The translations under genes were made by a program, and so were the position numbers. A model generated the notes under the pieces. That model did no database searches and was not told the origin of the DNA. It saw nothing but the letters and a program-made list of their open reading frames with translations. Below are positions 41,606-42,307 of a stretch of 64,000 nt of DNA, in pieces. Positions within the stretch are counted from its first letter, which is position 1; each line of letters opens with the position of its first letter. Source of the stretch: Obrimoposthia wandeli (Eukaryota); NCBI GenBank assembly GCA_977020255.1, contig CDROCS010002834.1, positions 1 to 64,000 of the forward strand, in the 5' to 3' direction.

Positions 41606-42307
41606 TTAATTCACCATTTTATGTAGCTCAGATAGCGATGTTGCCATTTTTACACCTGGGACATTCGTACCCACCGTTGCGACAAATGAACCACTCACAT
41701 TGCCTTTTTTATACGTTGTAAATGCCACGCGATATAGTCCGCGAGTCAATGCCTTGGCAGGTTTATTGACTTGAGTTTCGATACGCACTAATGAGTTATA
41801 TTCTGCGTGACGTTCTTCATCATAAGTATCATCACCGTCATCATCTTTATCCAAGACACTAAAAACTTTTTTTGCATTTTTTATTTTTGCCGGAGAGAAG
41901 ACACTCATGCGCTCTACTCGGATCCACGTATCGAACCACTTGTCGGCGTCTTTCTTCAGCTTTTTTTCAAACCCTTTTTGTACAAAATCATCGTCACTTG
42001 GTTCAGCCAAATCACCAACTGGTGAAATCATGCGCACCCCAAGCTCATCTAACACCGCGGGCACCCATATATATAAGTAATAAGCATCTTTACCTTTAAT
42101 TTTCTCGGAAGGTTTTGAATCTTTATCAATATAACCAAAGTAGTTAACACTATTTGCATATGGGACTGAAATTTTTGCTATCCCCAATCCTTCGGTACGG
42201 CTCGATGTTAAGCTAGGTAAACCGTCACCCGTTAAGCTACCGAAACTAAATGCGAATGCCGATGAACTGCACATCATTAAAGCGCCAAGCAATATTTTAA
42301 ATTTCAT
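41606..42307 (-). CDS. LipL32-family protein (Leptospira major surface protein homologue), likely signal peptidase I substrate
   Basis: Blocks YYLYIWVPAVLDELGVRMISP, WFDTWIRVERMS, DDDGDDTYDEERH..YNSL and RGLYRVAFTTYK..GSFVATVG match LipL32 as I recall it; signal MKFKILLGALMMCSSSAFA. Start could also be 42319. Confidence 0.88.
   Translation of the reverse strand: MKFKILLGALMMCSSSAFAFSFGSLTGDGLPSLTSSRTEGLGIAKISVPYANSVNYFGYIDKDSKPSEKIKGKDAYYLYIWVPAVLDELGVRMISPVGDLAEPSDDDFVQKGFEKKLKKDADKWFDTWIRVERMSVFSPAKIKNAKKVFSVLDKDDDGDDTYDEERHAEYNSLVRIETQVNKPAKALTRGLYRVAFTTYKKGNVSGSFVATVGTNVPGVKMATSLSELHKMVN

What the first reader, a model, noticed from the sequence alone, without database searches (positions are those of the whole stretch)
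41606..42307. Close LipL32 homologue in a marine Vibrionaceae genome, inserted between pheA and tyrA and probably not lipidated
Seen: a 233 aa protein with long blocks matching Leptospira LipL32 as I recall it (GVRMISP, WFDTWIRVERMS, acidic loop DDDGDDTY-EERH, YNSL, RGLYR..FTTYK, GSFVA-VG). The Ca2+-site residues (D-T of WFDT, the DD of the acidic loop, the Y of YNSL) appear kept. The signal ends in AFA and its only Cys follows LMM, which is not a lipobox. Known: LipL32 is the most abundant lipoprotein of pathogenic Leptospira, a diagnostic PCR and serology target of unresolved function, and a homologue was described in Pseudoalteromonas tunicata. pheA and tyrA are directly convergent in E. 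coli, so this gene is an addition; no IS ends or integron sites were seen. Inference: a soluble periplasmic or secreted Ca2+-binding or matrix-binding protein in a genetically tractable host, useful for working out what the family does.
Basis: partly seen in the sequence, partly recalled or inferred. Interest (0 to 1): 0.72.

Follow-up and report, generated by a model that had tools for sequence, protein, structure and literature searches.

The report
Non-lipidated LipL32-family protein in Photobacterium
A deep-sea Photobacterium, present as a bacterial contig in an animal-sized genome assembly, carries an intact relative of the Leptospira antigen LipL32 that looks exported but not lipid-anchored; it is a genuine but ordinary new member of a family already known and partly tested in marine bacteria.

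Summary
It matches Pfam Lipl32 end to end (229.6 bits), is 45-48% identical to L. interrogans LipL32, and its model superposes on Ca-bound LipL32 (TM 0.77-0.79). All five Ca2+-cluster residues and the acidic loop are kept.

"Not lipidated" is supported by pattern and comparison, not by experiment. LMMC fails a lipobox rule at every candidate start. An AFA cleavage site precedes a conserved mature N-terminus. Only 5 of the 46 nearest homologues have a lipobox.

The gene is a clean ~1.1-kb addition between convergent pheA and tyrA. It is absent from the four nearest Photobacterium species and from 64 of 67 species genomes. A mosaic pheA 3' end points to import by homologous recombination from another Photobacterium, without IS or integron marks.

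Novelty is limited. RefSeq already names LipL32-family proteins in P. frigidiphilum (94% identical), P. sanguinicancri and P. kagoshimensis. A ptlL32 knockout in Pseudoalteromonas tunicata already showed a host-surface attachment role.

The window is a bacterial contig in a 1.35-Gb assembly, not an isolate genome.

Verdict: new member of a known kind, modest interest.

The parts
41606..42319 (-). CDS of the LipL32-family protein, 237 aa plus stop.
   Evidence: ORF. PF12103 at 229.6 bits. GGGGGA lies 9 nt upstream of the ATG at 42319. Homologues are 237 aa and begin MD..MK.
42251..42319 (-). Predicted Sec/SPI signal peptide, residues 1-23: MDFRMKFKILLGALMMCSSSAFA, cleaved before FSFG.
   Evidence: A-F-A sits at -3..-1. 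No PS51257-like lipobox at any start. The Cys is not conserved in the nearest homologues, while the AxA site and the mature motif GDGLPxLTSS are. SignalP was not available.
41645..42175 (-). Lipl32 domain (profile 2-179 of 179), a beta-sandwich core. It holds the Ca2+ cluster D130, T131, D160, D161, Y174 (237-aa numbering) and the acidic loop DKDDDGDD.
   Evidence: invariant columns. AF2 model with pLDDT 86.4. Foldseek top hit 2wfk, Ca-bound LipL32, TM 0.77-0.79.
41458..42618 (.). A 1161-bp stretch that replaces about 100 bp in the four nearest Photobacterium genomes. Those genomes have only one bidirectional terminator between pheA and tyrA.
   Evidence: Collinear matches stop at window 41457/41458 and resume at 42619 in G016, G041, G023 and G040. 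The empty site was read.
41087..41482 (+). Mosaic 3' end of pheA: a tract of foreign Photobacterium origin co-imported with the LipL32 gene. The left crossover is near 41100.
   Evidence: Identity to G016/G023/G040 falls from 86-98% to 70-81% here, while those genomes stay 92-99% alike to each other. The 5' tree places the window inside their clade (99*). The 3' tree places it outside (100*/98*).
41504..41530 (+). Terminator hairpin between pheA and the LipL32 gene: 11-bp stem followed by a T run.
   Evidence: I7.
42558..42599 (-). AT-rich hairpin just after the tyrA stop codon, a possible weak tyrA terminator. The LipL32 promoter must lie between it and 42320 and was not identified.
   Evidence: (I1). 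The source-sample contig carries 49 extra letters at 42565/42566.
40307..41482 (+). pheA (chorismate mutase/prephenate dehydratase). Its Phe leader lies at 40150..40273.
42609..43736 (-). tyrA (chorismate mutase/prephenate dehydrogenase). Its protein is identical to that of G016 over 374 aligned residues.

Best explanation
The gene encodes a member of the LipL32 family (PF12103). Shown: family membership, fold, kept Ca2+ residues, absence of a lipobox, and the insertion with a mosaic flank. The protein is made with a 23-residue Sec signal peptide. Signal peptidase I most likely cuts it after AFA, releasing a soluble ~23-kDa beta-sandwich protein that is not lipid-anchored (inferred). It keeps the five-residue Ca2+ cluster and the acidic DDDGDD loop of Leptospira LipL32, so it most likely binds Ca2+ (inferred). 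By analogy with PtlL32 of Pseudoalteromonas tunicata, its most likely role is attachment to proteinaceous matrices on animal or algal surfaces, after export beyond the periplasm or association with the cell surface (inferred). The gene is a single-gene cargo in the convergent pheA/tyrA junction. This junction is variable in Photobacterium, and other species carry a pilin-like gene, a glycosyltransferase or an RTX/T1SS cluster there. The window's lineage obtained the gene from another Photobacterium by homologous recombination, with one crossover inside pheA. It has kept the gene under strong purifying selection.
For: Family and fold. Ca2+ cluster and acidic loop. No lipobox: the window fails a PS51257-like rule at all three starts. 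Only 5 of the 46 nearest homologues pass, and P. kagoshimensis, P. sanguinicancri and a Pseudoalteromonas protein have no Cys at all, whereas 33 of 43 more distant members have a lipobox. The AxA site and the mature N-terminal motif are conserved. Function by analogy: the ptlL32 knockout lowers binding to Matrigel and Ulva but not to polystyrene, and recombinant PtlL32 binds ECM (PMC4080168). Insertion: PF12103 was found in 3 of 67 Photobacterium species genomes, 4 of 401 Vibrionaceae and 8 of 401 of the order. The empty site is about 100 bp in the four nearest genomes. Recombination: mosaic pheA. Photobacterium LipL32 proteins form one clade (100*), with the window nested beside G001/G048 and P. 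jeanii outside. Selection: dN/dS 0.02-0.06, comparable with the 0.01-0.04 of tyrA and pheA. The gene is intact and carries the same mosaic in a sister lineage 91.5% identical in DNA (L038). Hot spot cargo.
Against: No signal-peptide predictor or experiment was available. Five near homologues do carry a proper L-[AT]-S-C lipobox at the aligned position, so lipidation varies within the clade. No promoter was identified, and no RNA run holds the gene. Two relatives carry disrupting deletions: 8 bp in L023 and 17 bp over the start region in a sediment contig of depth about 5. The gene can therefore be lost. A Sec/SPI protein lands in the periplasm by default, and no export route to the surface is shown. 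The family's function is disputed even in Leptospira: a lipL32 mutant showed no direct role in infection models (cited), and the title of PMC3544172 calls LipL32 subsurface.
Confidence: 0.6

Rival explanations
1. It is a periplasmic Ca2+-binding or envelope-structural protein and not an adhesin. It is exported by Sec, stays in the periplasm and acts there.
For: The Sec/SPI signal comes with no evident further export signal. Leptospira LipL32 was re-evaluated as a subsurface lipoprotein (PMC3544172, title). A lipL32 mutant showed no direct role in infection models (cited).
Against: The only genetic test outside Leptospira gave an attachment phenotype specific to biological surfaces, and recombinant PtlL32 binds ECM. 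The same junction in other Photobacterium species carries surface or secretion cargo.
Confidence: 0.28
2. It is a lipoprotein after all. Lgt and LspA would act on Cys17 despite the atypical LMMC, anchoring the protein in a membrane as in Leptospira.
For: A Cys sits at a suitable distance (position 17) after a hydrophobic stretch. Five near homologues have a canonical L-[AT]-S-C at the aligned position. RefSeq names the Photobacterium proteins 'surface lipoprotein'.
Against: Met at -1 and -2 fails the [AGS] rule. The Cys is replaced by Ser in the P. kagoshimensis and P. sanguinicancri proteins, which are 90-91% identical. An A-x-A site is conserved at a fixed distance from the mature motif. The RefSeq name is a family-level label. 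The LipL32 equivalog model NF038394 scores 210.5 bits, below its 300-bit cut-off.
Confidence: 0.12
3. On origin: the gene is ancestral at pheA/tyrA in Photobacterium and was lost repeatedly, rather than gained by the window's lineage through recombination.
For: The position is the same in every carrier. Synonymous divergence of LipL32 between carriers is as saturated as that of the flanking genes. G068, inside the G001/G002/G048 clade, lacks the gene but keeps the neighbouring pilin gene, which looks like a real loss.
Against: 64 of 67 species genomes lack it, with clean empty sites of about 100-300 bp. The window's pheA is mosaic exactly next to the gene. In the LipL32 tree the window is nested inside the distant carrier clade, and holding that clade together without the window gives AU p 0.026; that group was named after the tree had been seen.
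Confidence: 0.2
4. It is a decaying passenger gene with no current function.
For: There is an 8-bp frameshifting deletion in L023. There is a 17-bp deletion over the start region in a sediment-metagenome contig. No RNA evidence exists.
Against: The gene is intact in the window, in L038 and in four other Photobacterium species. dN/dS is 0.02-0.06. All family-invariant residues are kept. Both deletions come from low-depth Logan contigs and may be assembly errors.
Confidence: 0.05

Closest known systems
LipL32 of pathogenic Leptospira (PDB 2wfk, 2zz8, 3frl; NCBIfam NF038394)
   Same: Same Pfam family and fold, with 45-48% identity. It shares the Ca2+ cluster D-T-D-D-Y, the acidic loop DDDGDDTY.EERH and the N-terminal GLPSL.SS motif.
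   Different: The window protein has no lipobox and an SPI-type signal instead. It lacks a 6-residue N-terminal insert, the ~10-residue insert after YNSL.RI and the ~20-residue C-terminal tail. It scores below the equivalog cut-off, 210.5 against 300 bits. It comes from a marine gammaproteobacterium.
PtlL32 (PTD2_05920) of Pseudoalteromonas tunicata (PMC4080168; Hoke et al. 2008, cited there)
   Same: A LipL32-family protein of a marine, host-associated gammaproteobacterium. It is the only member outside Leptospira with genetic evidence, namely attachment to Matrigel and Ulva.
   Different: The PtlL32 sequence itself was not retrieved here. The paper reports that it clusters with Leptospira rather than with other Pseudoalteromonas proteins. 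The window protein belongs to the large SPI-type marine clade with other Pseudoalteromonas and Thalassotalea proteins. The genomic context also differs.
RefSeq 'LipL32 family surface lipoprotein' of Photobacterium frigidiphilum, P. sanguinicancri, P. kagoshimensis, and the P. jeanii hypothetical protein A3K86_08025
   Same: These are orthologues, 94%, 91%, 90% and 83% identical respectively. They sit in the same pheA-LipL32-tyrA-aroF position where it was examined.
   Different: They carry automatic annotation only. The 'lipoprotein' name does not fit their signals, and the P. sanguinicancri and P. kagoshimensis proteins have no Cys. No publication on them was found.

Membership tests
LipL32 family (Pfam PF12103) | Full-length match to the family HMM above the gathering score | tested here: met
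   229.6 bits against a cut-off of 25, covering profile 2-179 of 179. The six-frame genome search gave the same result.
LipL32 family (Pfam PF12103) | LipL32 beta-sandwich fold | tested here: met
   AF2 model with pLDDT 86.4 and pTM 0.80. The best PDB matches are all LipL32 chains, TM 0.64-0.79; the next hit is at E 2e-3.
LipL32 family (Pfam PF12103) | Ca2+-binding cluster Asp132, Thr133, Asp164, Asp165, Tyr178 and the acidic loop | tested here: met
   All five residues align as D, T, D, D, Y, and the loop reads DKDDDGDD. The cluster is listed in PMC5566480. Binding itself was not tested.
Major surface lipoprotein LipL32 (NCBIfam NF038394, equivalog) | Score above the equivalog cut-off | tested here: not met
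   210.5 bits against a cut-off of 300.
Major surface lipoprotein LipL32 (NCBIfam NF038394, equivalog) | Lipoprotein signal peptide with a lipobox Cys | tested here: not met
   LMMC fails a PS51257-like pattern at all three candidate starts. The Cys is not conserved in the nearest homologues. SignalP and LipoP were not available.
PtlL32-type host-colonisation factor | Binding to extracellular-matrix proteins and an attachment defect on deletion | not testable with these tools
   This is known only for P. tunicata (PMC4080168). For the window protein it is inferred from homology.
Mobile-element or integron cargo | Terminal inverted repeats, target-site duplication, transposase or attC at the borders | tested here: not met
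   Only short, weak repeats occur in 41350-42750. The insert holds no other ORF. The border evidence instead shows a recombination mosaic.

The most novel reading that the evidence does not exclude
The large marine-gammaproteobacterial branch of the LipL32 family, including all Photobacterium members, may consist of soluble, signal-peptidase-I-processed, Ca2+-dependent matrix-binding proteins released to the cell surface or the medium. The family name 'surface lipoprotein' would then be wrong for most of its non-spirochaete members. In Photobacterium these genes would spread between species by homologous recombination at a pheA/tyrA hot spot that collects host-colonisation cargo: a pilin, a glycosyltransferase, an RTX/T1SS cluster and LipL32.
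Probability: 0.3. Interest if true: 0.45.

Novelty: new member of a known kind. Interest (0 to 1): 0.3.

Why it matters
LipL32 is the main diagnostic antigen of pathogenic Leptospira, and its function is unresolved. Relatives in culturable marine bacteria offer a way to study the fold. That route was opened in P. tunicata in 2008-2014, so this gene adds a further orthologue rather than a new opportunity.

Three modest points come out of this work:
- Most of the nearest marine homologues, this one included, lack a lipobox. The RefSeq name 'surface lipoprotein' is therefore probably wrong for them, and lipid anchoring is not essential to the family.
- The family occurs in Vibrionaceae, which the 2014 survey did not list. 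It is rare there: 4 of 401 species genomes.
- The locus is a clean example of single-gene gain by homologous recombination at a convergent-gene junction that acts as a variable hot spot in Photobacterium.

Anti-LipL32 sera cross-react with PtlL32. Marine relatives at 45-48% identity could therefore matter for the specificity of serology in aquatic samples. The nucleotide divergence makes lipL32 PCR cross-reaction unlikely; this last point is inference.

Tried and rejected
- IS or integron explanation: no terminal repeats, duplication or recombinase were found.
- Recent transfer from the known carriers G001, G002 or G048: LipL32 nucleotide identity (78-80%) is no higher than that of the flanks (75-80%), and the pheA 3' tract is no closer to them. 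The donor is an unsampled lineage.
- Riboswitch or known RNA in the 289-bp upstream region: Rfam returned only the Phe leader upstream of pheA.
- Promoter: the consensus scan gave nothing convincing near the gene.
- Expression: no RNA run holds the gene, and all runs laid were contigs.
- Identifying the PtlL32 sequence among the hits: P0047 turned out to come from a MAG, and Hoke et al. 2008 is not held. The signal type of PtlL32 was therefore not checked.
- The genome search 'relatives' fails for this assembly because it is not a prokaryote genome. The Photobacterium genus was reached through locus L002 instead.
- The large representative-protein search was not used, because the word search and the family scans left nothing open.

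Full report
**What is there**

The minus strand of the window holds an ORF at 41606..42346. It matches Pfam PF12103 (Lipl32) over the whole profile: E 2.5e-68, 229.6 bits, positions 2-179 of 179. It also matches the three LipL32 crystal-structure sequences 2wfk, 2zz8 and 3frl at E about 3e-52.

The NCBIfam equivalog model for the Leptospira protein, NF038394, scores 210.5 bits. That is below its 300-bit cut-off. The protein is therefore a family member and not the Leptospira orthologue proper.

The most likely start is the ATG at 42319. It has GGGGGA 9 nt upstream and gives 237 aa. That is the length and the N-terminus (MD..MK.K) of the Photobacterium homologues.

An AlphaFold2 model built on 47 sequences has mean pLDDT 86.4. 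Its eight best PDB matches are all LipL32 chains. The best is the Ca2+-bound form 2wfk, with TM 0.77-0.79, rmsd 2.3-3.0 and 44-47% identity.

The Ca2+ cluster Asp132, Thr133, Asp164, Asp165, Tyr178 is listed in PMC5566480. It aligns to D, T, D, D, Y in the window protein, and the acidic loop reads DKDDDGDD. Compared with L. interrogans LipL32, the protein lacks three features: a short N-terminal insert, a ~10-residue insert after YNSL.RI, and the C-terminal tail.

**Lipidated or not**

The signal reads MDFRMKFKILLGALMMCSSSAFA, followed by FSFGSLTGDGLPSLTSS. This Cys is the only one in the protein. It is preceded by L-M-M, which fails a PROSITE PS51257-like lipobox rule at each of the three possible starts.

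The comparison with homologues carries more weight.
- Among the 46 nearest homologues (54-91% identical; mostly unnamed metagenome proteins, with Photobacterium, Pseudoalteromonas and Thalassotalea among the named or traced ones), only 15 have any Cys before the mature domain.
- Only 5 of those 46 have a lipobox.
- The P. kagoshimensis and P. sanguinicancri proteins are 90-91% identical to the window protein and have Ser at the aligned position.
- All of them keep a small-x-small site a fixed distance before a conserved mature N-terminus, [GDQ]F[SN]LN.L..GDGLP.LTSS.
- Among the more distant members, 33 of 43 have a lipobox. These include Marinomonas, planctomycete and spirochaete MAGs, and Leptospira.

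No signal-peptide predictor was available. Five near homologues with L-[AT]-S-C show that lipidation varies within the clade.

**Where the window comes from**

The window is contig C2834 of an assembly of 1.35 Gb in 6912 contigs. It is therefore a bacterial contig inside a eukaryote assembly. Earlier notes of this scan on other contigs of the same assembly also call it a deep-sea or cold-water Photobacterium.

Around the locus, the DNA is 89-94% identical to four Photobacterium species genomes, G016, G041, G023 and G040. It is only 75-80% identical to the three species genomes that carry the gene.

Near-identical pieces (99% or more) occur in an invertebrate-gut metagenome. Pieces of about 98% identity occur in a sediment metagenome.

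**The insertion**

PF12103 was found in 3 of 67 Photobacterium species genomes, 4 of 401 Vibrionaceae and 8 of 401 genomes sampled from the order.

In all 67 Photobacterium genomes, pheA and tyrA are present. In nearly all they converge across about 100-300 bp. In the four nearest genomes, collinearity with the window stops at 41457/41458 and resumes at 42619, with about 100 bp in between. That empty site holds one bidirectional terminator. The window thus has a 1161-bp replacement that contains only this gene.

There are no terminal repeats, no duplication and no recombinase gene. The border shows recombination instead.
- Identity of pheA to G016, G023 and G040 is 86-98% up to about 41100. 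It falls to 70-81% in the last ~400 bp, while those three genomes stay 92-99% alike to each other.
- A tree of pheA positions 1-780 puts the window inside their clade (99*).
- A tree of positions 781-1176 puts the window outside that clade, on its own long branch (100*/98*).
- tyrA is 93-96% identical to these genomes in DNA right up to its stop codon, and its protein is identical to that of G016.

A sister lineage, L038 (GCA_030599285.1), is 91.5% identical in DNA. It carries the same mosaic and an intact gene (94.7% nt identity). The import therefore predates that split.

Photobacterium LipL32 proteins form one clade (100*) inside the marine gammaproteobacterial branch. Within that clade the window groups with G001/G048, and P. 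jeanii lies outside (97/93*). The pheA trees, in contrast, put G001, G002, G048 and G068 together without the window. Holding the carrier clade together without the window gives AU p 0.026, but that group was chosen after the tree had been seen.

Synonymous divergence between carriers is saturated, as it is in the flanking genes, and dN/dS is 0.02-0.06. The most economical reading has two parts. The gene entered Photobacterium once. It then moved between lineages through homologous recombination of the flanks, with occasional loss. G068 is an example of loss: it keeps only the neighbouring pilin-like gene.

A fourth Vibrionaceae genome, G240, has a 52%-identical copy next to a DDE transposase fragment. 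In the tree that copy groups with the lipobox-type Marinomonas branch, so it is a separate acquisition.

**Function**

The closest experimental evidence comes from P. tunicata.
- Recombinant PtlL32 binds extracellular matrix and cross-reacts with anti-LipL32 serum.
- A ptlL32 deletion lowers attachment to Matrigel and to the alga Ulva, but not to polystyrene (PMC4080168).

I therefore take a Ca2+-binding, matrix-binding colonisation factor as the most likely role, at about 0.5. The main rival is a periplasmic role, at about 0.3. It gains some weight from three observations. First, a Sec/SPI protein is periplasmic by default. Second, the title of PMC3544172 calls Leptospira LipL32 a subsurface lipoprotein. 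Third, a lipL32 mutant showed no direct role in infection models (cited).

No promoter was found. No known RNA element lies upstream. No RNA data exist. A weak hairpin follows tyrA, so read-through from aroF-tyrA cannot be excluded.

**Novelty**

The family's presence in marine bacteria, its patchy distribution and likely horizontal transfer were published in 2014. That list had no Vibrionaceae. No paper was found that links LipL32 with Photobacterium or Vibrionaceae as a finding.

RefSeq already names 'LipL32 family surface lipoprotein' in P. frigidiphilum (94.4% identical to the window protein), P. sanguinicancri and P. kagoshimensis. This is a new member of a known kind.

The points worth keeping are the probable misnaming of the clade as lipoproteins and the recombination-driven hot spot at pheA/tyrA.

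Noticed in passing
L002:4227-4697 (G001, between tyrA and the LipL32 gene) and L019:1347-1817 (G068): A 156-aa pilin-like gene with a prepilin N-terminal methylation motif (PF07963) sits in the same pheA/tyrA junction. In P. kagoshimensis it lies beside the LipL32 gene. In G068 it is there alone.
   Followed up: partly
L020:1241-12984 (G047), L017:1265-2536 (G008), L018:1341-2630 (G024): Other cargo occupies the same junction. G047 has a ~12-kb cluster with a 1987-aa repeat protein, an ABC/C39 exporter, further ORFs not scanned against Pfam and a HlyC-type acyltransferase. G008 and G024 have a GT4 glycosyltransferase. The pheA/tyrA convergent junction is a variable hot spot in Photobacterium.
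   Followed up: partly
L023:1295-2000 (Logan contig of SRR30643700); window 41899-41906: A relative about 91.5% identical in DNA has an 8-bp deletion that frameshifts the LipL32 gene into 150-aa and 82-aa pieces. This is either a pseudogene or an assembly error.
   Followed up: partly
window 42301-42317 and 42565/42566: A sediment-metagenome contig of depth about 5 lacks 17 bases over the start-codon region of the gene. The contig from the probable source sample carries 49 extra letters in the hairpin after tyrA.
   Followed up: no
L009:1287-1910 (G240, another Vibrionaceae genome): A second, unrelated acquisition of the family in Vibrionaceae. The copy is 52% identical, lies on a 3.4-kb contig next to a DDE_3 transposase fragment, and groups with the lipobox-type Marinomonas branch.
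   Followed up: partly
window 40150-40273: A Phe leader (Rfam RF01859, 75.6 bits) lies upstream of pheA, as in enterobacteria.
   Followed up: no
window 31001-33540: This stretch matches many places in G041 at 93-97% identity. It looks like the end of a multi-copy rRNA operon and was not examined further.
   Followed up: no
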